Of a DNA stretch of 64,000 bases, positions 49,860 through 64,000 are shown one piece after another. The notes under the pieces are model-generated. The model searched no databases. It worked only from the letters and a program-made list of their open reading frames with translations, and was not told the DNA's origin. The stretch lies in the NCBI RefSeq assembly GCF_947568905.1, contig NC_079164.1:92008001-92072000 (forward strand). Reading direction: 5' to 3'. This stretch comes from Ostrea edulis (taxonomy: Eukaryota). Numbering within the stretch: the stretch's first letter is position 1; every line of letters begins with the position of its first letter. Made by a program: the position numbers and the translations under genes.

Positions 49860-50506
49860 TATTTATATTTTCACCCATGTTTTAAAAGGAAGCCATTATG
49901 ATGATGTAGAGTACTTCCTTGAGTGGAAAAACTAATTTGTAAAATTTAAATACACAAAAATTAATCTGTACAGTTGCAATTTGACCCAATCTTGTAAAAG
50001 GAAATGTACTTAAAAATTTCCAGATTTACGTTAACTAGTTATTTTCATATGCCAAGAAAGCATTGACCAATAAGACTGAATCTGATGATGCAGATATAAG
50101 AAACAATACAATAATATGCATACTGTATTTCATTTTATTTTACAAATGATCTGTCAAAATGACAGCAACATAAACTGCATGTAGTTCTGTAAAACATGAT
50201 GAGAAGATAACATTTCTGGTTATGTTTCTTTTGAAAGGACATGTCTGGCTGACGAATTCGACAGATAGTGGAAATAAGTCCTCATGAAATATAAGTGATT
50301 TACTAACTATCTGAATAAGAAATACCCCATTGTTAATTGTGAGATTCAGATTTGCTTAATATGTAATACACAGCAGTACAGTAGCATGTCCATGATTATT
50401 CTGTCACCACTGTAGAAAGAGATGAAATTAAACATTGGAAATCTGATTGTATCACACAATATCAATACACAGGAATGCGTTAAAAGAGCTAAACTGTGAG
50501 TGGAAG

Positions 50507-52136
50507 TTATGAGCATTTCCAGGCCGATTTATTAAGTCTGTCCAGTTCCTTCACTTTTTTGTACCTCCATATATACCACAGAAAGCCCACAGCAATAAGA
50601 AGCAGGGATTCTATATAGTAGCCATCTAGTGTGGTCTTGCATGCACCTCCATGTTGGGTACATTGCTGGAAAAAAAAATTCACAGATACAGTAATAAGCA
50701 ACTAAAATGCACACACCTTAGGCATTAGAAGAATTGTTAACATTGCATTACCCGAGTTATCATTCTAAAGCTCATCAAAATACAGCTATAGACTGCAAAA
50801 TCATGAAATCTCTAAATACAGCTAGGGACTACAAAATCATGAAATCTCTAAATACAGCTAGAGATTGCAAAATCATGAAATCTCTGCAACACGGTATACA
50901 GTGAAACCTGTCTAACTCAACCTGCACTGGGGTCAAATTTTGGTCAGATTTATAGACAGGATGGTGGATTGCAGTGTCAAGTAGAAATGGGAATGAAAAT
51001 TTGGGTCAATGTTCATTTTTTACATTTCCTACCACAGAGCCACTTCATCCAACAATCCTCCTTTCAATGGTGGATAATTAGAAAATGGTGAAGTTTCTAA
51101 CTATCTTCTCAAAATTACTTGGTCAGAGTTGGCAAAATTTTTGTGATGGTCTCCTTATATAGTGTAGATAAAATATTGTTCAACTCCAGCCTCCAGTGCC
51201 AGGATGGGGCCACCAAAGGGATCCATGTTTAGATGTGGCAAAGTTGACCCCAACTTTGATGAATGACCTTGACCTCTATCTAGTTTTGACCTTAACCATT
51301 CAATTCATTGAAGTCTTTACCTTGTATAATTAAAATTTTATGACCAAGTTAAAGTTACAGACAACCGAAAAAATTAACAAACCAAAAACATGTCCCCAGA
51401 TGTTCAATCTCCATCACATAAAAATGTTTTAAAAGCTTCTGAAGAACAGCCATTAAAGCTACCACTGTAGTGAACAGTACAAAAGGGAACTGTACTGTCT
51501 CACTAGAGAGCTAGCTTTTCTAGTGATGTGATAGAGTCTCTCTCTTGATCTCACAAGTTAAGCAATGGCGAGCGTGATCAGCACTTGGCTGGGTGACCGC
51601 TACACGTTATACTGCATGTATTATTAGTGTACACAATATGCAAATGACATGTAGAGTATATATGCAATATTCATAGATGTTTCATATTTGTATAAAGTAA
51701 TCCTTTAGATGGGATCCAGACATGCTGCATTTTAACCCCACTATCTACTTCTCTATCTTTAATGTTACATGTATCCTATCTATAATAAATAGATGATGAC
51801 AGCTTACTTCATCTACAGGAGCTGAATTTTCACAACTACCATTTGCTCCAATACACTCTTTCCATGTCAAACCATCCACTAACCACAATGCCAGTGTGCT
51901 AGGCCAGTTACCACCTGAAATACACATAGTTTACAGACAATTCAATCAAGTCTTGAGAAATAAATCTTTCATCCTCTTGCAGTACTTTTGATAATAATTC
52001 TTTCATTTTAAAGGGCATAGACACAATTTTTATGCCCCCCCCCCCGATCGAAGATTGGGGGGCATATTGTTTTTGTCTTGTCTGTCATCCTGTCTGAAGC
52101 TTTAACCTTGCTAATAACTTTTGAACAGTAAGTACC

Positions 52137-52171
<35 letters not shown>

Positions 52172-52271
52172 CAAAAAGACTTTTCCGTGGGTACCAATAT
52201 TTTTTATCCGGTTACCTTGACCTTTTTGAAAACTTTAACCTTGCTTAAAACTTTTGAACAGTAAGTGCTAA

Positions 52272-52304
<33 letters not shown>

Positions 52305-52634
52305 CAATACCTTTCTGTGGGTACCAACATTTTTGACCCTGTGACCTTGGAGTTTGACCTACTTTTAAATTTTTTAAACTTTACTAATAAATTTTGAACA
52401 GTAAGTGCTAGAGCTTTGGTATTTCACATGAGTATTGTGACAAGACCTTTCCATGGGTACTAAACCTTTTGACCTTGACATCTGAACTACTTTTTAAAAA
52501 ATTTGACATTGGTCATAACTTCTAAATGGTAAATATCAGAGCTTTCACATTGCACATGAGCATTTCCTGTGACAAAATCTTTCTACTGTTACTAAGATAT
52601 TTGTCCTTGTGACCTTGGCCATCATTGGAATTGA

Positions 52635-52673
<39 letters not shown>

Positions 52674-55600
52674 CTGACTGATTGAAGTTGACAGGTTTTT
52701 TTTTTTATAGAAATAGAGATCATTTATAGATAAGTGGATTAAAATCATTTCATAGAGCATATACTTTGCATTTACATGTTTATCAACATGCTTTTCATAG
52801 CCAGGAAACCACGTGTGGAGATGAAAACACCAAGATTTCTAAAAAGTATGTCGCAAGAATTCAACATTTCGACATAATGATAAATCAATTTAGGAAGCAA
52901 GCACAAAGAAGAAAGAATAAAAAAGTTTTGTTGTAAAAGCTTTTTTTCAACAAAGCTATCAACTTTGGACCATGCTGATAGTTGAGTCACGTGACATGTA
53001 TATATAAACAGGGTTCGTGCCTTGTTTTGAAAGTGAAAAGTTCAGATGTCTCAAATACAACTTTGTGTCAGTTTTTGAAATTTAGCTTTGTTATGTTTTA
53101 CAGGGATCAAATACCATCATATTGTCAATTAAATATCTAAATAACTTTTTTGTACCCAATTCGTGTCCATGCCCCTTTAGTAACATTTATTCTCACCTTC
53201 TTAATATTTGTATGGATGCAACATGTAAAGATTAAGAAAAGAACAGAATGGATAAGGTGTTAAGTAGTGTCATTGCTAGCTTACCGAGATTGGATAAGGT
53301 GTTTTAAAAGTAGTGTCATTGCTAGCTTACCGAGATTGGATAAGGTGTTAAGTAGTGTCATTGCTAGCTTACCGAGATTGGATAAGGTGTTAAGTAGTGT
53401 CATGTAGGTGCCTCCTATAGCAGGGTCGCTGATCTTAGCGTGGAAAGCCATGGAGGATACAAACATGCTATACAGCGCCACCTATAACAAACCAAGTGCA
53501 TTGATTATTCTGTTTAAAACTACAGATGGTACAAAATGTGTACATTTTTGAAAAGCATACAATAACTGACTGCAGTTTGCTCATTTATAATAAATTATTG
53601 CACGAGTCACGAAAATTGAAATTACTTCTTTGTATGATAAAAGATGCCAAAACACCTGGAAATACATGTGCAAGGAAACTTACCTGATGAACAGCATAGG
53701 CAATTAATATAAATGCATAAAAAGAGGCTGGGAAAACTCCAGGACTGGTTTGTACACCATAAGACATCCACACCATGAAGGCATACACAAAGCCCAGTAG
53801 TAATCTGCCAATACAAAAAAATCAACACCCACTTCACGAAATATGCAGTATCTTTTTCTTCCAAAAGACCCAAAGAAAAAAAACCACAGGCTGGACTTTC
53901 TTTTACATTGATAAGTAAATGAACATTACCAATTACAATTCAGCTTCTTTATGTACAATAAAGTTATCATTCCATTTCAAAAGAGATTCTGGGATTAAAA
54001 ACCCGTGAATTGAAATGAATCTATCAGACACAAGTGCATGTATGTAATCCTTTTGCTTCAATGATTTTTTAACTACAGAATACAGTAATCCTTCTTCCTG
54101 AAAACACATAATAGTAAAACAGCCTTATAGCAAAGTGCTGGGGTTGAACAATTTTAATTCCTTATAAACGTAATTCATTGTACTCATGAAGTTCATTATA
54201 TGTTTTGATACTAGAGGGAATGAAAATCACTTGGCTGTAAATGTGAATTTATTGAGAGTGTTTATTGTTACTGTATTTTACTGTATGTAGGATAATTGAC
54301 CAGTCTTCTGTAGTAGGGCTATATGGACCCTGGATATAGGCCTGGATAGCTCAGTGGTTAGAACACCTGACTAGTAATGCATGGGTCCCAGGTTCGATTC
54401 CTGGTCCAGCCATATATTTTCTCCTTCCTACATTACAATACCTACCTAAATGGCATTGCACGCAGGAACACATCCATGGGGGTTGGACCTGCAGTGTATT
54501 TACTGATGATCAGTGGTAGAATGATTTGTATAGGAATCATGGGAATAGCAAACAGAGCCAGTGTCTCCTTCTTCATTCCAGCCTCAATCAACTTCAAACC
54601 TGTCATGGAGTCGGCAGCTGCAAATCCAATCTGTTCAGGAAAAATAGCGAATCTAATATTAATCAAGATTGGGGGCAAATCTAAATTTCATAATGAAAAT
54701 AAAATTGAAGGATTCTTCATGAGTGACATTTAGGTACCATATGAAACATTTCAGGTATGGCAAAACATTTGCTATGCCCCAACTCAAATTTCATTAAAGT
54801 ACTAGTTTGTTAATGTCTGACCTTGACTGTGAGAAGTATAATGGCATAAGAGATCACAGGAGGTAGGCGGATGACCTTGACTAGTTGTTTGTATGTGTCT
54901 ACGATGCCCTGCTCACTGTCTGCATCAGGATCATCAGCCTCGTGCTTCATTATCATCACCAGGGTTGTTGTCACAAAGAAAACAATGCCCCAGAAGAACA
55001 TGAATCCTAAGATACAAGTAGATTGTGTTACTATTTCAAAAACCAATGGATGTTCACTACCAATTTTAGCCTGATAAAAGTTTGTGATGTTAACATCACC
55101 TATATGCGGTTTTTAATGTAAAATATCATACTGTTGTGCTTACCAGCAAGAGTGACAACTCCAGTTTTCTGAGGTTCATGTCTCAAATACTTGTTGCAAA
55201 AATCAGCGGACTCTAAGGCTAAAAACAAAATGTTTCCCAGAAAATACCCTGCAGTTTGTCCAACAGAATTACATGTGCTTGCCCAGCCAACATTTCTCCT
55301 GCGAATAGAAATAATGTATGCATGTACAGGTTTTGATCATAAGTGTACGAATGTATAATAAGTCTACTTACCTTTGGAAATAAACATTATTTCAATTCAA
55401 TTGTTGAGATATTTCTGTATATTTACCTGGAGAGCATTGTCAGGGCCCAGCCGTCTACAGCTATGTCTTGGGTGGCAGCGAGGAAATTCAACATAAAGAA
55501 TATTGCTGTTAGCACATATATACTCACTCCTCCACCGTTGGTCTCCCGTCCTATCAAACTGTCTACTTGAAATGATAAGATTACCATGAAAACTCCAATC

Positions 55601-55971
55601 AGATATTGAATAGGAACCAACCAGCTCTTCCTTCTTCCAAAAGAAGACAAATACAAAGAATCCACAAGAGGTGCCCATATCAATTTCAGGCTAAATGGCC
55701 AGAACACGAAACTAAACACAGCTTGTTCTTTGTAACTAACACTTCTGCTTTGCAACAGCATAGGTACACTGCCCGCTACACCAAGGGGAATACCTTGAAG
55801 TAAATATAGAAATAACAACAAAGCCACATTGCCATAGTCTCCTTCTAAACCCCTCGAGTTATCTGTAGATTCCTCATGTCTTGTTCTGGTGGACACAGGT
55901 ACATGGGGGAATGAATCTTCTCCTAAATCTGTTTCCTCAACTGTGTGCCTGGTACTTCGCCTTGCTGCCAT
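50507..55971 (-). CDS. SLC33A1: Acetyl-coenzyme A transporter 1 (AT-1), about 521 aa, eight coding exons
   Basis: Exons 55971-55427, 55298-55144, 55006-54822, 54630-54446, 53804-53684, 53481-53373, 51914-51808 and 50665-50507 join in frame. Motifs: LLFLYLLQGIPLG, WPFSLKLIWAPLVD, RRKSWLVPIQYLIG, ATQDIAVDGWAL, DPAIGGTYMTLLNT.SNLGGNWP, DGYY. An in-frame upstream ATG exists at 56019. Confidence 0.95.
51466..51604 (+). mobile_element. 139-bp LTR-like element containing a 5S rRNA-derived internal promoter
   Basis: TGTAG...CTACA termini; 51539-51601 aligns ungapped to the metazoan 5S rRNA A-box to C-box segment (about 46 of 63 nt by hand against human 5S recalled from memory). No TSD seen. Confidence 0.65.
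52028..52673 (+). mobile_element. HINE with about four ~120-bp internal repeats
   Basis: 5' TATGCCCCC..GATCGAAGATTGGGGGGCATA hairpin; 3' CGGGGGCATTTGTGTTTCACAAACACATCTTG palindrome. Confidence 0.8.
53250..53403. repeat. 42-bp tandem repeat that duplicates an SLC33A1 exon end and 5' splice site
   Basis: Minus-strand unit ATGACACTACTTAACACCTTATCCAATCTCG|GTAAGCTAGCA, about 3.5 copies; the third has a 4-bp insertion. Confidence 0.95.
54309..54437 (+). mobile_element. Solo LTR with tRNA-like sequence (Helenus-like TRIM)
   Basis: TGTAGTAG...CATTACA termini; A box TAGCTCAGTGG at 54347-54357, B box GGTTCGATTCC at 54391-54401; homologous to the LTRs at 57187-57520. Confidence 0.75.
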
Positions 55972-56198
55972 TTTTGAGGTAGTCAATAAATATAGTGATT
56001 TAATAAGCTTCTTCAACATACACCATCTAGTAGAGTTGTTTTAAAGCTTCCATCTCTAAAATAAAAAGAAATAATTAGGAAATTTTACTCTAGACTTATT
56101 AAGTTTAAGCTACCATCTTCATACAGGGTTGCAAATTCATTGAAAACTCGTGATCACCATGTAAGCTCCTGACAAAAGCACTTCTGGGAGCCAACATC

Positions 56199-56317
56199 TG
56201 TAAAAGGAAGGGAGAAAATGCAACAGAATTTGAACCCAGGCTCCCTGAATATCTAGTCAGGTGTTCTACCAACTGAGCTATCTGGCCATCGGCAATCGAA
56301 CCCGGCTGACTGCTACA
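56199..56317 (-). mobile_element. Solo LTR with tRNA-like sequence and 4-bp TSD
   Basis: Minus strand TGTAGCAG...TAGCTCAGTTGG...GGTTCAAATTC...TTTTACA; CATC on both flanks (56195-56198 and 56318-56321). Confidence 0.82.
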
Positions 56318-56850
56318 CATCATATTCAAAGAGCACACAAATTTATGCATCAATTACTATTCCAAACTCTGTTGCCAGAAGGTTTCTTTTTATTGTGAGT
56401 TTTAAATTCCTTACCTTTCTATTCTGATGATTCAATTTCCAGCATTTTGGCTACATTAACCAATTTTTGTTCATAAAAAATCTAAGGTTGCCACATGGGC
56501 AAGTTTGGGTGCAATTGTAGCAATGAGTGGTGTCGATAGGTTGGTGCCAGAAACATGAACAGTTCAAACTATATTCAGAGCCTAGCATCTCATGTTTGAA
56601 GGAGTACACTTAACTCAACCGATGGAAACATCAAAACTTTTACCAATAAACACAATTTGTAAACTCCTTAATTAAGGGCAGTGTGTTGTAAATGGGGTGA
56701 TATACACTTTTATACAACTTTTTGTTTGGATTAAATAAAATGGAAATTTACATCAAAATAGCTTTATCTAGCTAATGAAATTAACTTGATGGAGCTCTTT
56801 ACCATTTAAAAGTTGTATAGATAAATCAAGAGAGTGTTGGACTTATTATG

Positions 56851-57157
56851 TGTGGTGGGCAGACAGGATCAGGGGTCAAGGTTCAAATGTTAGCCTGTTC
56901 CATTGCATTTCTCTCTCTGTTATATTTGGTGCAATAGACCAGCCCCTGGAATTGACAGGTGAAAATGCCTGTCAGAGGATATTAAAGATCTTGGGTTGAT
57001 AGTGTGAAGACATTTAAGGACGGAGGAATGTGGCTTTCAGACAGCTTTGATCGCTGGTGGCAAGATAGCTCAGTTAGTAGATTACCTGACTAAAGATTCA
57101 GGGGGCCAGGGTTCAAATTCCAGTCTGGAACGAAGTGTTTTTTCCCTTCCTGTTACA
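56851..57157 (+). mobile_element. Two-LTR TRIM with tRNA-like LTRs
   Basis: Eroded 5' LTR 56851-56924; PBS-like TGGTGC at 56927; purine tract AAGGACGGAGGAA at 57016-57028; 3' LTR TG...TGTTACA at 57029-57157 with A and B boxes. Confidence 0.75.
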
Positions 57158-57186
57158 AATCTGACAATAGATGTATTCATATATAC

Positions 57187-57520
57187 TGTAGTATAGGAGA
57201 GGAAAAATTTGTTGGCCAGACCAGAATCAAACCCTGCACTCCTGCATTACTAGTCAGGTCCTTTAACCACTGAGCTATCCAGGCCGATATCCACTGTCCG
57301 TATAACCCTTCCTCTTCCTTTTAATTTGTCTTTGAAGACATACAACCCAGATTCTTTTTGCCCCTGGCAGGACAACCTGCAGTGCAGGGGTGGTCAACGG
57401 TACCAACTGTAGTATAGAAGAGGAGAAAATCTGTGGTTGGACCCGGAATCAAACCTGGAATCCCTGCATAACTAGTCAGGTGCTCTAACCACTGAGCTAT
57501 CCAGGGCGATATCTACGGTC
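57187..57520 (-). mobile_element. Two-LTR TRIM with tRNA-like LTRs
   Basis: 5' LTR ~57520-57408 ending TACTACA; PBS TGGTACCGTTGACC at 57405-57392; PPT AAAAGGAAGAGGAA at 57322-57309; 3' LTR 57308-57187 ending TACTACA. Confidence 0.82.
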
Positions 57521-58812
57521 CATAATGATGATTAATCATGATCTATTTGTAGAATAATCTTCTGATAGCTGAATCCTCGTGTCTTGGAAGATAGATCCGC
57601 GAAATAAAGTTGTAAGAGGTAGATAAAGCAGCGACACCAGCTGGTGTCACTGAATTCCCACTTTTTAATATGGAGTCCGCTCTGACTCTCCCCCGCACAT
57701 GTCACAATATAAAAGCGGAGGTAAGAGTCAGAGGAATCTCGGATTACGGTCCATATAGCCCTTACTACTACAATACTTGGGTCACATATGTCATTACAAG
57801 TTTGTAGCTCAGCAGTGAGCACCTGCATTGAATATATATATATCACTATCATTCCAATTTTCAGCAATATGCAGTGAATTTAAACTGAAATTCTGACGGC
57901 CGCTATACTTGTTCAGAAATAGCTGTACAATCCAAACCGGCCATATGCTATTTTTGTTCCAAAAAAAGGCCTGAGAAAGCCGAGTCGATCCTCTTATACA
58001 AAACATGCCACATTTATTGAAATTCTATGTAAATGTTGGAAATATACTGTACCTGTCAATTCTGTAATCAGCTTTACACAAATTATTTCCTAATAATTTC
58101 AATATTCGACGTGGCGAAACACGATTGTTTATTTTTCCTGAACGTGTGATCGGATACCAACAGTAGTACTAAGAAAATTCGTTCAAAAGAAGAAGGGAAA
58201 AAAATCATCCTCTAGAAATAAGGAGATCCAACTCAATGATTAAATGATATTCATTGATTTTATAAAGCGAAAATTATAATGATACTAATTCAAGAATATA
58301 TCAAAAATAGGTATGAAGAATAAAGAACATTAAGCACGACTTATCATCTTTCTCAAAGTGAAAGTAGGAAAAACAGAAAACGTACAACGGTACATTATGA
58401 TTATTATAAACTGCGTTCTACAAACAAGTGACATGACAAATGTGAAATAAGGCAGGCTGAACGCATAATAATACTAGGTAATGCAATAACCCTGAAGAAG
58501 CGTCTGTTTTAAATCTATGTCGAAACACTTCGTTTATGTTTATATTCTGCTTTCTTGACTTGTCACAAAATAATTCATCATCATGAATTGCAAGTCTTAT
58601 AATCTGTTGTATCTCCTGATGTCGATAGCTAATATCAACAGTAGAACGTTTTTAGGACTGTCTTGTAATTGAACTGATTGGGCAACACTCGACAGTCAGA
58701 CTGGGCGATATTAACTGCGGCATTTTGACAAAGTTAAATTGTGATTTTCAATTTTCTATGAAATTGTCGGGTCCAGTTAGCAGTACCATCTCTATAGATT
58801 TATCAATCTATT

Positions 58813-58987
58813 TAAGGAATGACTTTAATTCTGGGGCAAGTTATATGAGTATAACCTGGTTTGGGTCAGTTTACGCTTTATGATCCGCGAAGCAAATCAT
58901 AAAAAAGAGTAAACTAGCTGTTACAGTAAACTGACCCAAACCAGGTTATACTTGTATAACTTGCCCCAGAATTAAAGTCATTCCTTA
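58813..58987. mobile_element. 175-bp MITE with 62-bp TIRs
   Basis: TAAGGAATGACTTTAATTCTGGGGCAAG... arms at 58813-58874 and 58926-58987 with 2 mismatches; probable TA target. Confidence 0.85.
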
Positions 58988-61500
58988 TAATTTAATGCAA
59001 GAGACAAAGATACTAACCTTCGTTTATCAAAATGTACATAAACTCGGAAAAATACAAGTCAACTGAGCCGCGCAATGATTCACTTAGCAACAACGACGAA
59101 GTGTCTAGCTGTGAAGGTCGACATCTTTAATCTTAGTTCTATGGAGCCTAGCCTATTTATCAAAATATTGTATTGAAGGTGAAGTTTGTCATGATAGAAA
59201 ATACGTGTAGATACTAGACTATCCATGCAATGTGTATTTCGCTGACCTTTAGAGAAAGACATTGACTTTGAAGTCGCTCATCTCAGACAAATTGAGAAAA
59301 TACGGGAAATTGGATTGTTTAGGCCTACCCAAAATAAATCTTCAAATATCAGAAAATGCAATAATTTACGGCTTTTAACTCTGCGAAAACTTCTACTACA
59401 TGAAAACTTACCCTTGCATACAACGTTATCGCTAATAGTAAATCCAACACAAGTAAATATGTCTAAGCAAGTGACAAATCACGATCCACATGTCAATTTG
59501 ACGTCATGTAATAAAATGTGACGTATGAATTTTTGTTTGCTTTGATGAAAGGCGGATCAAGCAATGAAACACCCCCACCCCCCTTTTCCCCAGTGAGAAA
59601 TATATTTCAAAATGAACAGGGCAATGCTTACTTGGTAAATCATTGATTCGAATATAATATTGTTTTAATCTATTATTTGACCATCATACAGAGAAAGATG
59701 TTTTACAACAGTGATTTGCGTACAAGTAAATGCTAACATGTGTATCAAACCGAAGTATCTTATTGTACGTGTTGACTTTCTATCCCATGGAAGGCTAAAA
59801 ACAGTGCTGCGATGTAAATTTAGAGAGAGAAAAAAAAATAGTTCAGGCTTCTGGTTGTCAAGGCGGTGTGTCCCATACCAAACCAGGTTATACAAAAATA
59901 ACCTGTGTTCCTCAATTGGAATTTGACCAATCAGAGACAAGGATACAATAAGAATTAAATTATATATAGCTTTAAAAAGCTATATGAAATAGCTTGAATT
60001 AACTATTTCAAAACTTTTATGAAATAAATTTCTGAAAACCAAAAAATTGAATTTCACTGCATGAGTGAAAATTTGTTTTTATCTAATATATGTATTCCAT
60101 GCAACACATTAAAAACTATCCTATCTTCAGCATAGACTAAAAGTCCCATGATCGAGGATCAACAGTATAAAGGATTATTTAAGGCAATTGGATTCCACCA
60201 TGTGAAGTCATCATGCTTATTTATGCTTCAATGCACACAGGATAGTGGTCAATTAACAAAACAAAGAAAATGTTCTGTTCATGAAAATTCTTAAAACGAC
60301 ATACTGAGTCAGGGATTTATTTAAGTTTTTTTTACAAATGGTAAAGGGTACCTTTCCCCCTTTGACAACAAATGATTATTTTCCCTTCCACAGTTGAAAA
60401 TTTCCCTTCAATTGTTGAAACTACACAAAACTGTATGAGAATTATAACAAAAATCATTTTTATTAATATTCTAAGTCATTTTCTCTATAATTATCAAAGT
60501 CGTACGATAAAAATAATGATCAGTAATCAATCAATTTATATGCCTGTTTTGAGATATCATAATCTGAAGATGTCCCCCACCACCCCACTCTTGGGAGCTA
60601 ATGTGACTGCATTCTCAAAAATTCCCCCCAAAATTAAAATGGGTTGTAACATCTAAAAGCTGGATAAAATCCAGGGAGTACTGTTGTTCTGAACCGTATT
60701 TAAAAAAATAGTGTTATGGCTAATTCAAAGTATAAACATGTTAAAAAATTATTATGCACCTTTTTGACTAGGCCATTGATTTAATCTAATGGAATCTAAA
60801 CTAGCTTAATCAAGCTATTTCAATTAGCTTTATAAAGCTATATAGCTTAATAAAGAAAAATAGCTAAATATAGAGATTGTGGTGGACCTGATTATAGATA
60901 TACAGTGTTCAGTAGCAGCAGAACTTAGTTATGGTGAAAAATGGTTAATGCTAATCCCCCCACCCCCGTGAGTTCTGCATGCAGCTATAGGTATAGACTA
61001 CTACAATGTTTTATTGTTGTAATGATAGATATCCGATGGACCCAATTTTCATGGTGAGAGGACCAAGCTAGGCCACAATTATTCTAACTAGGTATTGACC
61101 AGACCCAATGTTACACCCAAGCAGGTCAAAATTTTGAGTCTGCTTTGGGTTAGCTGTGGGTTCACTAGGAGTCGTGCTTCTCTTAGTCAGCTTCAGAGCA
61201 GACTCTGGGTTTGCTTTTAAAGTATAATTTGTTCTTTCATGCATGAGGTATTCCTGGAGTCAGCTGACCCAGCTTTAAGCTTAATCACAAATGTACTCTG
61301 AATACACATTTTTGAAAGCAAAGTTGAAGAATACTTAGTGAGACTCCATACAGAAGTGAATTTTTTTCATTGCTGGTCATTAAATAGTGATAACAAAGAG
61401 AAAATCTTCTGCAAAACATGGACAGATATCAAATCCTGAATATTTCTGAAATGTACAAATTTAGGCAGAATTTTTTTGTTTTCAGGTTGTGATATTGATA

Positions 61501-62582
61501 CTGTTTACAGGGTTATTTTCGCCTTGTGTTATTTTTGCAGATAGTTTCACCCCTTTTTAAATTTGCCCAGATATACAGGTGACTCTCGATGGCTCGAAGT
61601 TCAATCTCTCGAAGTTCTCGGTCTCTGGAAGTGAAATCATGGTCCCGATTTTTCTCTCTGTATAACAAAGCAAATTTACTATCGAACGTTCGATCTCTCG
61701 AAGTGAAGTTGGGTCCCGTAAAACACATTTCATTGTTTTTCACTCTCGATCTCTCGAAGTGGTGGTAGCGTATACCCACCGTTACCCAAGCGTGTAATAA
61801 TTTCTGCTTGAACCTTACCTGGATTTTGTTGAATGCTGGAGGGGTAATTAGGTGTTTACATAGTTGAAACATTGCTGTGCTTCTGTGTGGAGGTGACACA
61901 CTTGAGTATATAATTGGCTAATTGGTTGCTTTACACATTACACTGGGGTTTTGTGTTGTGATGATTAAAAAAAAAACTATATATAATCCGACTATGAATA
62001 AAATCTATAATTTGTTTTGACTTGACAATGAGAGAGTAAGTTTTATACATAATTTAGAGATCTACAGTTTGTTCTTTATGTAAAGTTACTCTAAAACATC
62101 GTTTTACTCATTCATTAGAATTTTTGCTTTTGGTAAATCGACATAACATTGTGTTCTGTTTAGTTTGAGATAGTAAAGTGTCATCGGAACTTGGTTTTGT
62201 ATGCCTATCTAAGCATGATTAAAGAACAAATAAATACCTAAACTTTAAAATGTTTTTATTAATGCAAAATAAGATTTTTTATTTTGATATCAAATTAACT
62301 ACCTGACGAATATGAAGGAAAACATGTCAAAACAATATCATATGATCTTGTTGGTATACATTTCCAGTTACTGTAAAATCTTAACCATACCGGCGGACCG
62401 TCAATTTCCGAATTTCGAACTTTCGATTTCTCAAAGTTTTATCAAGGTCCCTTGAACTTAGAGTTATCGAGAGTCACCTGTAGTTGTGTTAAAAGAGAGA
62501 TATGAGAGAAATTAGTTTTGCCCACTCTTAATTTCGCCCAGTGACAAAAATAAAACGAGGGCGAATATTTCCCTGTATACAA
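61501..62582. mobile_element. TA-flanked Tc1/mariner-type MITE (host of a nested insertion)
   Basis: CTGTTTACAGGGTTATTTTCGCC ... GGCGAATATTTCCCTGTATACAA, with TA on both sides. Confidence 0.7.
61576..62480. mobile_element. Pogo/Tigger-like non-autonomous element nested in the previous MITE
   Basis: Perfect 15-bp TIR CAGGTGACTCTCGAT, TA TSD and subterminal CTCGAAGT repeats. Confidence 0.85.
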
Positions 62583-63226
62583 TATACTCCTCCTTTTTCC
62601 ATAAATTCTTTATAGGGCTGAAGCAGTAAGCCCCTATACAATACAATGTGTATTGCAATACTTATTCCACGTGTGGTATATTTTATAGAAGAAACAAATA
62701 ATAACTGTCAAAGAAAAGATTTTTAACAAAATGCTTCTAAACCACTAAATGGCTCTGTAGTTTGACTTGTTTAAGTTCATGATTGTTTTTGTCAGACTTG
62801 TGGCTGACAACAGTCTGGATCCTTTTGCACATTTAAACTTAGTTAAGGTTAACTGACAGTTAACTTCTAGGAGTCAATGGCAAGTGAAATGTCAGTTAAA
62901 TTAACCTTCATATAAAAATGATATGTACAAGTCAAGCCTAATGTATTTAACTGAACCTGACTTTAAAAAAACCCATAGTGAACGAAGATCGAGGCAGTGA
63001 ATTGAAGATTGAAATGAGCGTTTGTATTAAATGGTATCGATATTTCGGTGAATCGTTTCAGCACTAGTTCTTTAGGCTGTGTGATCTGACATCCTCCCGT
63101 CTAATCTGACATTCTGTCTAATCTGACATGTAATTTTTCTCTCGGGGCATATCAGATTAAACAGGTTTCACTGTATGTGATTTACATTGTCATTAATATT
63201 TTTGTTTTGTTTGTTGCAGTGTAAAA

Positions 63227-63970
63227 ATGGGAGTAAGGGGATTATTATCCCACTGCTTGCAGAGGAGAGATGAATGTGTTGAAGAGATAGATTTAGTATC
63301 TTTAGCAAGAAACGAAGGTGGCATTGAAATTCTTGTGGACTTTTACTCCTTTGAACACATGGTTCTTCCTAAATTCTGGAAGGGATTAAGCAACCTTAGA
63401 TACAATGACTATCTGAGAATACTCGGAGGTGAATATGGATCAATCGAAACATTTATTAGAAGATTTGTTGAAATTTTCAAGCAGTTAAAGATCTCTTTTG
63501 TGTTCTTCTTGGATGCTACAAAAGGCTGTTCAGATGCCAATACACAGCAGAAGCTAGACACCTGGATGAAGAGACATAACAAAGACGTCGACAGTTTGAA
63601 TGAAGTAATAAATGTGTGCCGAGGAACAACAGATATATCAAAATTAGAAGAACAAATGTTCATCAGACCTGTTTGTTTAGAAGTGCAGGTTGTTGAAACA
63701 TTAAAATCCTGTGGATGTGAATTAATTCAAAGTGTGACGGGGGAAGCAGACTTCATGATTGCAAAAGCTCTGCATGACCGCGAAAAGGCTTTTGCCGTAT
63801 GGAGTAATGATTCAGATTTTTGTATTTTCAGTAACTGCAGATTTATTCCCAATGAATTGTTCGATATTAACAACAGCCTTCAGTTAGGCCTTCCGATTGA
63901 TGTTCCAATGAAACCTGAGTCGCTTATGTGTGGAATAATCTCTACTGAAAAAGTCATGAACACATTTGGG
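63227..63970 (+). CDS. Asteroid/FAM120-type XPG-like PIN-domain protein, first coding exon (continues past the window)
   Basis: 248 open codons ending at a GTATGT donor: MGVRGL, ILVDFYS, LGGEY, VFFLD, GEADFMIA and WSNDSDFCIF. Absent from the ORF track because no stop falls inside the window. Confidence 0.88.
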
Positions 63971-64000
63971 GTATGTATTCTTAATAGTCAAGATATGAGA

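What the first reader, a model, noticed from the sequence alone, without database searches (positions are those of the whole stretch)
56851..57520. Tail-to-tail pair of miniature LTR retroelements whose LTRs are tRNA-like Pol III promoters
Seen: two ~300-bp units with the order LTR-PBS-short hairpin-PPT-LTR, pointing at each other 29 bp apart. Each LTR has an A box (TAGCTCAG.TGG) and a B box (GGTT(C/T)(G/A)A(T/A)TC). Both internal regions share CCCCT..CAGG...CCTG..AGG, TGGGTTG and AAGACA. The minus-strand PBS TGGTACCGTTGACC is close to the complement of the tRNA-His 3' end (TGGTGCCGTGAC). Knowledge (from memory): TRIMs with small-RNA-derived LTRs include Cassandra (5S) and Helenus (tRNA). Inference: two diverged subfamilies of a non-coding, Pol III-driven LTR parasite that would be misannotated as SINEs or tRNA pseudogenes.
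Basis: partly seen in the sequence, partly recalled or inferred. Interest (0 to 1): 0.8.

Follow-up and report, generated by a model that had tools for sequence, protein, structure and literature searches.

The report
Dead Helenus tRNA-LTR mini-retrotransposons in oyster

Summary
56851-57157 (+) and 57187-57524 (-) are two LTR-PBS-hairpins-PPT-LTR units, tail to tail and exactly 29 bp apart. Independent DNA runs confirm the arrangement.

Each unit belongs to a large family in this 895-Mb oyster genome. Intact copies are about 366 bp, with TG..CA LTRs of 129-140 bp. They have a PBS matching the genome's own tRNA-His, a polypurine tract abutting the 3' LTR, and 4-bp target duplications. In the younger family 18 of 30 copies have perfect duplications, against 2 of 30 in a shifted control. 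This rules out a SINE.

Kojima 2024 (PMC10886601) already describes this kind as Helenus, with 16 families in Ostreidae. The plus unit is a CpG-decayed relative of Helenus-1_SaGl. The minus unit belongs to the Helenus-2_SaGl / 4_CVi / 2_CGi lineage.

The window copies are relics. One LTR has lost its A box, LTR tips are deleted, and neither element has a recognisable TSD. Two solo LTRs lie nearby (54309-54437 and 56199-56317).

Pol III transcription remains untested, because no RNA run was available. The scan had already flagged Helenus-type TRIMs elsewhere in this genome (four earlier notes).

Side observations: some genomic copies carry an exact 18-nt tRNA-His copy, a direct trace of priming, and two gag-bearing elements share the LTR tips.

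The parts
56851..56924 (+). Family B (Helenus-1_SaGl-like) element, 5' LTR. It is 74 bp instead of 129: an internal deletion removed the A box. It starts TGTGG and ends GTTATA.
   Evidence: Comparison with the 129-bp 3' LTR and with genomic copies.
56925..57028 (+). Family B internal region: TT spacer, decayed PBS (56927-56940), hairpin 1 (CCCCTGG..CAGG..CCTG..), remnant of hairpin 2, and PPT AAGGACGGAGGAA (57016-57028).
57029..57157 (+). Family B 3' LTR, 129 bp, running TGTGGC...CCTGTTACA. It holds a tRNA-like segment with decayed A and B boxes and a T-run. It aligns without gaps to young genomic LTRs, with 25 of 129 positions different and 7 of 9 CpG sites lost.
   Evidence: Homology of genomic copies stops at 57157.
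57158..57186 (.). 29-bp spacer of non-element DNA between the two 3' LTR ends.
   Evidence: Bridged by independent contigs.
57187..57309 (-). Family A (Helenus-2_SaGl / 4_CVi-like) element, 3' LTR. It ends ...CTATACTACA at 57187. The first 11 nt of the LTR are deleted. The A box is intact and the B box is decayed.
57310..57407 (-). Family A internal region: PPT remnant AAAAGGAAGAGGA (57310-57322), hairpin 2 remnant, hairpin 1, PBS TGGTACCGTTGACC (57392-57405), and a 2-nt spacer.
57408..57524 (-). Family A 5' LTR. The tRNA-like segment at 57438-57503 scores 28.8 bits against Rfam tRNA (threshold 29). About the first 15 nt of the LTR are missing or replaced beyond 57524.
56199..56317 (-). Solo LTR of family B, 84% identical to a young copy over the whole 129-nt LTR (a short internal deletion leaves 119 bp), flanked by a perfect 4-bp TSD GATG/GATG (56318-56321 and 56195-56198).
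54309..54437 (+). Solo LTR of family A with intact A and B boxes. It is called a tRNA by ARAGORN and by Rfam (39.2 bits, 54340-54412). No TSD is recognisable.

Best explanation
[quoted passage not shown] The copies come from two ostreid families and inserted independently, 29 bp apart and tail to tail. They sit in a small cluster that also contains two solo LTRs.

How the family works, with the basis for each step:
1. The A and B boxes of the tRNA-like part act as an internal Pol III promoter. The RNA starts at the tRNA-like +1 in the 5' LTR, must read through the single T4 run of that LTR, and stops at the T4 run of the 3' LTR. This would give U3 of about 30 nt, R of about 80 nt and U5 of about 19 nt. 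This step is inferred.
2. The RNA, which carries two conserved hairpins between PBS and PPT, is packaged by the Gag of an autonomous partner. This step is inferred.
3. tRNA-His primes minus-strand synthesis at the PBS. This is shown by copies whose PBS is the exact 18-nt copy of the genome's own tRNA-His.
4. The PPT primes the plus strand. This is inferred from its position.
5. The partner's integrase inserts the DNA and makes a 4-bp TSD. This is shown at the family level.

The window copies are only about 80% identical to young copies. They have lost CpGs, LTR tips and one A box, and they are not expected to be active.
For: Structure and ends:
- Alignments of 19 and 30 genomic copies show LTRs starting TGTAG... 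and ending ...TTACA or ...TACTACA, followed by TT and TGGTGCCGT(T/A)GACC. The tract AAGGAGGGAGGAA directly abuts the 3' LTR.

TSDs:
- Family B has 18 of 30 perfect 4-bp TSDs, against 2 of 30 in a shifted control. A 3-LTR array is flanked by ATAC/ATAC.
- Family A has 8 of 19 with at least 3 of 4 matching, against 2 of 19 in the control.
- The solo B LTR in the window has GATG/GATG.

Abundance:
- 850 LTR/PBS junctions and 2552 LTR 24-mers were found at up to 2 mismatches, with 0 for reversed controls.

Primer:
- The genomic tRNA-His(GTG) 3' end plus CCA is the exact complement of TGGTGCCGTGACCAGGAT.
- That 18-mer replaces the family's imperfect PBS, in register, in L065, L070 and L086. In L066 and L087 the copy runs on into further tRNA-His sequence.

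tRNA-likeness:
-.

T-runs:
- There is one T4 run per LTR and none elsewhere in intact copies.

Published identity:
- Kojima 2024 describes the kind, including ostreid families, 4-bp TSDs and a tRNA-His PBS group.
- Exact 40-nt and 34-nt stretches are shared with Helenus-1_SaGl-LTR. Exact 28/29-nt stretches are shared with the Helenus-4_CVi, 2_SaGl and 2_CGi LTRs. The hairpin-2 18-mer is present in published ostreid Helenus internal sequences, among them Helenus-4_CVi-I and Helenus-2_SaGl-I.
Against: - Neither of the two window elements has a recognisable TSD, and two of their four LTR starts are missing, so at this locus the case rests on homology to better copies.
- No RNA data exist for this stretch, so Pol III transcription, the start site and read-through of the T4 run in the 5' LTR are all unproven. 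A T4 run directly after the tRNA-like part should stop many Pol III transcripts before the PBS.
- Own LTR pairs are only slightly more alike than LTRs from different copies (94.5% against 93.7% in family B; 84% against 83% in family A). This fits a burst from one master copy, but it is weak on its own.
- The comparison with the published consensus sequences was made by exact short words and by eye, not by a computed alignment.
Confidence: 0.93

Rival explanations
1. The units are tRNA-derived SINEs, single or dimeric, mobilised by a LINE. The apparent LTRs would be two SINE heads.
For: The repeats contain a tRNA-like head with A and B boxes followed by a T-run. Kojima proposes that Helenus arose by insertion of a SINE into a TRIM LTR.
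Against: There are fixed TG..CA ends about 30 nt upstream of the tRNA-like part. There is no A-rich or LINE-like tail and no graded 5' truncation. TSDs are 4 bp rather than long and variable. A PBS and a PPT sit at the exact LTR borders.
Confidence: 0.02
2. The units are short pieces (1.5 repeats) of a roughly 237-bp satellite or tandem repeat made of a tRNA-like part plus a spacer. They would not be transposed units.
For: Arrays of the form LTR-I-LTR-I-LTR exist. Examples are L004/L017/L024, L029, L032/L050, and runs spaced about 237 bp apart at C4:43244790-43245264 and C1:107223977-107224452.
Against: Most loci hold exactly two LTRs and one internal region, dispersed over all ten chromosomes, each with its own 4-bp TSD. 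One array is itself flanked by a TSD. Arrays are a known secondary product of TRIMs (PMC6934838).
Confidence: 0.03
3. The tail-to-tail pair is one composite element, a foldback or inverted-repeat unit that moves as a whole.
For: The two units face each other only 29 bp apart. Tail-to-tail LTR junctions occur at other loci (L066, L085, L089).
Against: No other genomic hit spans both units. Homology of all copies stops at the LTR ends 57157 and 57187. The two units belong to different families of different age. At the other loci the junctions run through a PBS copy, which the 29-bp spacer here does not contain.
Confidence: 0.02

Closest known systems
Helenus-1_SaGl (Saccostrea glomerata; Kojima 2024, Data S1)
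   Same: The LTR is 129 nt, the same length as family B here. Exact 40-nt and 34-nt stretches are shared with this genome's young copies. By eye, about 8 differences in 129 against young copies and about 29 in 129 against the window's 3' LTR. The internal plan is the same: TT, His PBS, CCCTGGAATTGACAGGTGAAA hairpin, second hairpin, AAGGAGGGAGGAA. The TSD is 4 bp.
   Different: Young copies here start TGTAG rather than TGTGG. Their PBS carries an extra A (TGGTGCCGTAGACC), and the anticodon-loop region differs. The window copy is a decayed relic with a deleted A box in its 5' LTR.
Helenus-2_SaGl, Helenus-4_CVi, Helenus-2_CGi / 2B_CGi (ostreid Helenus with Thr(AGT)-like LTRs)
   Same: Family A shares exact 28- and 29-nt LTR stretches with these, the PBS TGGTGCCGTTGACCACCCCTGG of Helenus-2_SaGl, and the hairpin GTCTTCGAGGGCGAAGAC. 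ARAGORN reads one copy as tRNA-Thr(AGT), matching Kojima's note that bivalve Helenus can mimic tRNA-Thr.
   Different: The LTR tail (…TTTTCTCCTCTCTCCTATACTACA) and the U3 start differ in detail from each published consensus. No single published family matches both the LTR and the internal part best.
Cassandra (plant TRIM with 5S rRNA in its LTRs) and Ajax (nemertean)
   Same: The same idea: a TRIM whose LTRs carry a small-RNA gene segment with a Pol III promoter (the TRIMp3 class of Kojima 2024).
   Different: Those use a 5S-derived type 1 promoter, make 5-bp TSDs and occur in other hosts. Here the promoter is tRNA-derived type 2 and the TSD is 4 bp.
biv-TRIM (Satovic et al. 2019, PMC6934838)
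   Same: A bivalve TRIM with solo repeats and tandem arrays.
   Different: A different family: no canonical PBS, a conserved TGATCCCAAAGGAC motif, and no tRNA-like LTR reported.
tRNA-derived SINEs (SINE2)
   Same: A tRNA-like head with A and B boxes, short length and high copy number. Annotation tools confuse the two.
   Different: SINEs have no LTRs, PBS or PPT. They use LINE-type insertion with variable TSDs and tails.

Membership tests
Helenus (TRIMp3, Kojima 2024) | Two direct LTRs around a short non-coding internal region, whole element under 1000 bp | tested here: met
   Intact copies are 365-367 bp, made of an LTR of 129-140 nt, an internal region of 93-109 nt and a second LTR. The window units are 307 and 338 bp.
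Helenus (TRIMp3, Kojima 2024) | tRNA-like sequence with A and B boxes inside each LTR | tested here: met
   Rfam tRNA scores 39.2 and 28.8 bits. ARAGORN calls both LTRs of most genomic copies. In the window, three of the four element LTRs keep both boxes, though decayed.
Helenus (TRIMp3, Kojima 2024) | PBS complementary to a tRNA 3' end directly after the 5' LTR | tested here: met
   The PBS follows a TT spacer. Its first 9 nt, and then GACC after one inserted base, match the genome's own tRNA-His(GTG). Some copies match 18 of 18.
Helenus (TRIMp3, Kojima 2024) | Polypurine tract directly before the 3' LTR | tested here: met
   AAGGAGGGAGGAA abuts the TG of the 3' LTR in both families. The window has AAGGACGGAGGAA and a decayed AAAAGGAAGAGGA.
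Helenus (TRIMp3, Kojima 2024) | 4-bp TSD (animal Helenus) | tested here: met
   Family level: 18 of 30 perfect against 2 of 30 in the control. In the window only the solo LTR at 56199-56317 keeps one; the two elements do not.
Helenus (TRIMp3, Kojima 2024) | Sequence homology to published ostreid Helenus consensus sequences | tested here: met
   Exact shared words of 28-40 nt and by-eye alignment to Data S1. No computed alignment was made, because typed consensus sequences were not sent to tools.
Helenus (TRIMp3, Kojima 2024) | Transcription by RNA polymerase III from the LTR | not testable with these tools
   No RNA run holds the stretch. It is also unproven in the original paper.
Helenus (TRIMp3, Kojima 2024) | Dependence on an autonomous Gypsy partner | tested here: inconclusive
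   Two gag-bearing, His-primed LTR elements share about 10-14 nt at both LTR tips with families A and B. Their pol could not be fetched.
tRNA-derived SINE | LINE-type insertion: A-rich or LINE-like tail, variable-length TSD, 5' truncation, no LTR | tested here: not met
   Fixed TG..CA ends, 4-bp TSD, paired LTRs, PBS and PPT.
Functional tRNA gene | Canonical cloverleaf with a 7-nt anticodon loop and a consistent isotype | tested here: not met
   ARAGORN reports 4-base 'anticodons' (agta, agag) for nearly all copies.

The most novel reading that the evidence does not exclude
The genome preserves fossil replication intermediates of Helenus. These are insertions made of a complete LTR, then TT, then the exact 18-nt (sometimes 27-39-nt) copy of tRNA-His, and nothing more. 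That is the makeup of plus-strand strong-stop DNA. They were inserted without a recognisable TSD, which suggests an integrase-independent route.

Together with the in-register 18-mer replacements, they would be direct genomic proof of the primer. With the tip-sharing gag elements and the two covarying hairpins, they would allow the TRIM-partner relationship to be worked out in oysters.
Probability: 0.4. Interest if true: 0.4.

Novelty: already known. Interest (0 to 1): 0.15.

Why it matters
The practical value is in annotation. Each copy adds two tRNA-like hits, and this genome holds thousands of such LTRs, which inflate tRNA and SINE counts. The locus itself adds at most a species record to Kojima 2024. 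The side observations could give a cheap, sequence-only way to study how a Pol III-type TRIM borrows a Gypsy machinery. These are the tRNA-copied PBS, the LTR-plus-PBS-only insertions, the shared LTR tips with gag-bearing elements, and the conserved hairpins. They lie outside the window and are only partly followed up.

Tried and rejected
- RNAalifold on a MAFFT alignment of 18 internal regions found no compensatory pairs. The alignment put the two hairpins of families A and B out of register, so it is uninformative. Single-sequence folds give the two hairpins with z of about -4 for young family B copies and only -0.4 to -2.3 for family A and the window copies. Covariation in hairpin 2 (GTCTTCG/CGAAGAC, GTCTTCA/TGAAGAC, ATCTTCA/TGAAGAT, GTCTTTGG/CCAAAGAC) was read by eye and was not tested statistically.
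- An apparent 15-17-bp TSD around the LTR+PBS insertion in L061 was rejected. The target there is itself locally repetitive, and five other such insertions show nothing above shuffled controls.
Pol and integrase were therefore not examined, and 'Gypsy' rests on the paper.
- No RNA run holds the stretch, so no expression test was possible.
- biv-TRIM (PMC6934838) was considered and is a different family.
- Clustering: 9 of 55 independent loci have a second, separate Helenus block within 1.5 kb, and several more hold adjacent or arrayed copies. This was noted but not turned into a claim of targeted insertion, because the search may favour word-rich places and the genome-wide density is known only roughly.
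- Published consensus sequences were not pasted into tools, so identities to them are by eye.

Full report
**What is there**

The stretch was read directly. On the minus strand, a direct repeat of about 100-120 nt recurs at a spacing of 222 nt and flanks 98 nt of unique sequence. On the plus strand, a 129-nt repeat at 57029-57157 has a shortened partner at 56851-56924.

Rfam scores the minus-strand 5' repeat as tRNA at 28.8 bits, just under the threshold of 29. A further copy at 54340-54412 scores 39.2 bits, and ARAGORN calls that one too.

The window is AT-rich eukaryotic DNA. It comes from an 895-Mb genome with ten large sequences. Runs labelled 'oyster metagenome' hold the stretch, so the host is an oyster. 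Its size does not fit the three ostreid assemblies used by Kojima 2024; that is my inference, and the species name is coded here.

**Family anatomy**

Searching the genome with each unit gave about 1900 first-look candidates each, and dozens of near full-length hits.

I aligned 19 copies of the minus-strand family (here 'A') and 30 copies of the plus-strand family ('B'), each with flanks. This fixes the true borders.
- LTRs begin TGTAGTAATTAGGG (A) or TGTAGCGGTCAGCC (B), about 30 nt upstream of the tRNA-like part.
- LTRs end ...CTATACTACA (A) or ...CCTGTTACA (B). These are TG..CA ends with short inverted tips.
- After the 5' LTR come TT and TGGTGCCGTTGACC (A) or TGGTGCCGTAGACC (B).
- Directly before the 3' LTR lies AAGGAGGGAGGAA.
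- Family B is very regular: 129 + 108 + 129 nt.

Target-site duplications:
- In family B, 18 of 30 copies have perfect 4-bp TSDs, against 2 of 30 at shifted control positions. A three-LTR array is flanked by ATAC/ATAC.
- In the older family A, 3 of 19 are perfect and 8 of 19 match at 3 or more of 4 positions, against 0 and 2 in the control.

Own LTR pairs are 94.5% identical on average in B and 84% in A. The window's A copy is 76.5%.

Exact-word counts give 850 LTR/PBS junctions and 2552 LTR words for family B at up to 2 mismatches, with none for reversed controls. That means hundreds of full elements plus solo LTRs and arrays.

**The window copies**

The B element (56851-57157, +) has a 5' LTR cut to 74 nt by an internal deletion that took the A box. 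Its 3' LTR aligns without gaps to a young copy, with 25 of 129 differences, and it keeps 2 of 9 CpGs.

The A element (57187-57524, -) lacks about 15 nt at the start of its 5' LTR and 11 nt at the start of its 3' LTR.

Neither element has a recognisable TSD. The 29-bp spacer is ordinary DNA.

Two solo LTRs lie nearby. An A-type LTR at 54309-54437 has intact boxes but no TSD. A B-type LTR at 56199-56317 has a perfect GATG/GATG duplication.

That makes four insertions within 3.3 kb. Such clustering is common in the family: 9 of 55 independent loci have another separate block within 1.5 kb, and TRIMs are reported as insertion hotspots (PMC6934838).

No genomic hit spans both units, so the pair is not a composite element. 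Contigs from three independent studies bridge the junction without a difference.

**Mechanism**

*Shown.* The genome's tRNA-His(GTG) gene ends ...ATCCTGGTCACGGCA. With CCA added, its last 18 nt are the exact complement of TGGTGCCGTGACCAGGAT.

The 16-mer core of that sequence occurs 79 times in the genome, against 0 for the reversed control. I examined the first 30 sites.
- In three full Helenus copies (L065, L070, L086) this exact 18-mer replaces the family's own imperfect PBS, and the internal region continues in register. This is what is expected when the PBS of a progeny copy is inherited from the plus-strand copy of the tRNA primer.
- In L066 and L087 the copy runs on into further tRNA-His sequence.

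tRNA-His priming is therefore recorded in the DNA. The 4-bp TSDs show integrase-type insertion.

*Inferred.*
- Pol III start at the tRNA-like +1.
- R of about 80 nt, bounded by the single T4 run of each LTR. Intact copies have one T4 per LTR and none in U3 or the internal region.
- Read-through of the first T4 run.
- Packaging through two hairpins between PBS and PPT. These fold well in young B copies, with z of about -4. By eye they show compensatory changes between families and published consensus sequences.

No RNA data were available.

**Known or new**

Kojima 2024 (PMC10886601) defines Helenus exactly as this: TRIMs with a tRNA-like sequence in the LTRs, a PBS, a PPT, and 4-bp TSDs in animals. 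The paper lists 51 families in pteriomorph bivalves, including 5 in Crassostrea gigas, 4 in C. virginica and 7 in Saccostrea glomerata. It describes a tRNA-His PBS group and names Gypsy-39_CGi as a similar autonomous element.

Its Data S1 holds these matches:
- Helenus-1_SaGl has a 129-nt LTR and the same internal plan as family B. Exact 40- and 34-nt words are shared.
- Helenus-2_SaGl, 4_CVi and 2_CGi/2B_CGi share 28/29-nt LTR words with family A, along with the PBS and the hairpin-2 18-mer.

The kind and the lineages are therefore already described. At most this is a record in another oyster. Four earlier first-reader notes of this scan flagged Helenus-type TRIMs elsewhere in the same genome.

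**Candidate partners (observed only)**

Among the His-PBS sites, two groups are not Helenus and carry gag-like reading frames downstream.
- L067/L073 has a zf-CCHC match. Its LTR starts TGTGGTAGTTTGGG and ends GCTACA followed by TTATT before the PBS, as in Gypsy-39_CGi of Kojima's Fig. S2C.
- L077/L082 has weak SCAN/PNMA capsid-like matches. Its LTR starts TGTAGTGGTTT and ends TTCCGGTTACA.

Their tips resemble those of families A and B respectively. Such tips are common in this group of elements, and pol could not be fetched, so this is only a lead.

**Caveats on procedure**

In one search I printed a majority-rule string of the aligned TRIM copies to map coordinates. I worked from single real copies (L040, L044, L013, L030) and give no consensus here.

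Noticed in passing
L061, L062, L068, L080, L083, L087 (also L063, L075, L076, L081): These insertions consist of a complete family B LTR, then TT, then the exact 18-nt tRNA-His copy TGGTGCCGTGACCAGGAT, and then unrelated DNA. L081 reads LTR-TT-18mer-AA-LTR with no internal region. This is the makeup of plus-strand strong-stop DNA. No TSD above chance was found. About 13 of the 17 Helenus-linked exact-PBS sites in the sample are of this truncated or rearranged kind.
   Followed up: partly
L066 (same place as L014), L085, L089: Tail-to-tail junctions occur between a family B LTR and an inverted family A or B LTR, joined through a tRNA-His copy. In L066 the copy covers 39 nt of the tRNA, reaching the anticodon stem. 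These look like recombinant reverse-transcription products.
   Followed up: partly
L055:1741-1870 (minus strand): A chimeric 5' LTR starts as family A (TGTAGTAATTAGGGCTATATGG...), ends as family B, and is preceded by a PPT. This suggests template switching or recombination between the two families.
   Followed up: no
L067/L073 and L077/L082 (C1:69313798, C1:96502486, C2:15944598, C2:50147376): These are gag-bearing LTR elements with the canonical tRNA-His PBS. Their LTR tips resemble those of Helenus families A and B, making them candidate autonomous partners. Pol was not seen, because no more genome letters could be fetched.
   Followed up: partly
L007:850-1507: A tandem array of a 46-bp unit derived from the A-box region of the family A LTR (about 14 copies) lies next to an element. 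It is a micro-satellite born from the tRNA-like part.
   Followed up: no
window 57558-57700: Word depth in independent DNA runs is extremely high here (up to about 450,000, against about 64 for unique DNA in the same run). This means another high-copy repeat lies just beyond the truncated 5' end of the family A element, and it may have caused the truncation.
   Followed up: no
My permissive Rfam scan of 50000-64000 listed no 5S rRNA match there. I looked no further.
   Followed up: no
G000:C1:101093893-101331373: Six exact tRNA-His 3'-end matches fall within about 240 kb. Two were fetched and confirmed as tRNA-His(GTG) genes, so this is a tRNA-His gene cluster.
   Followed up: partly
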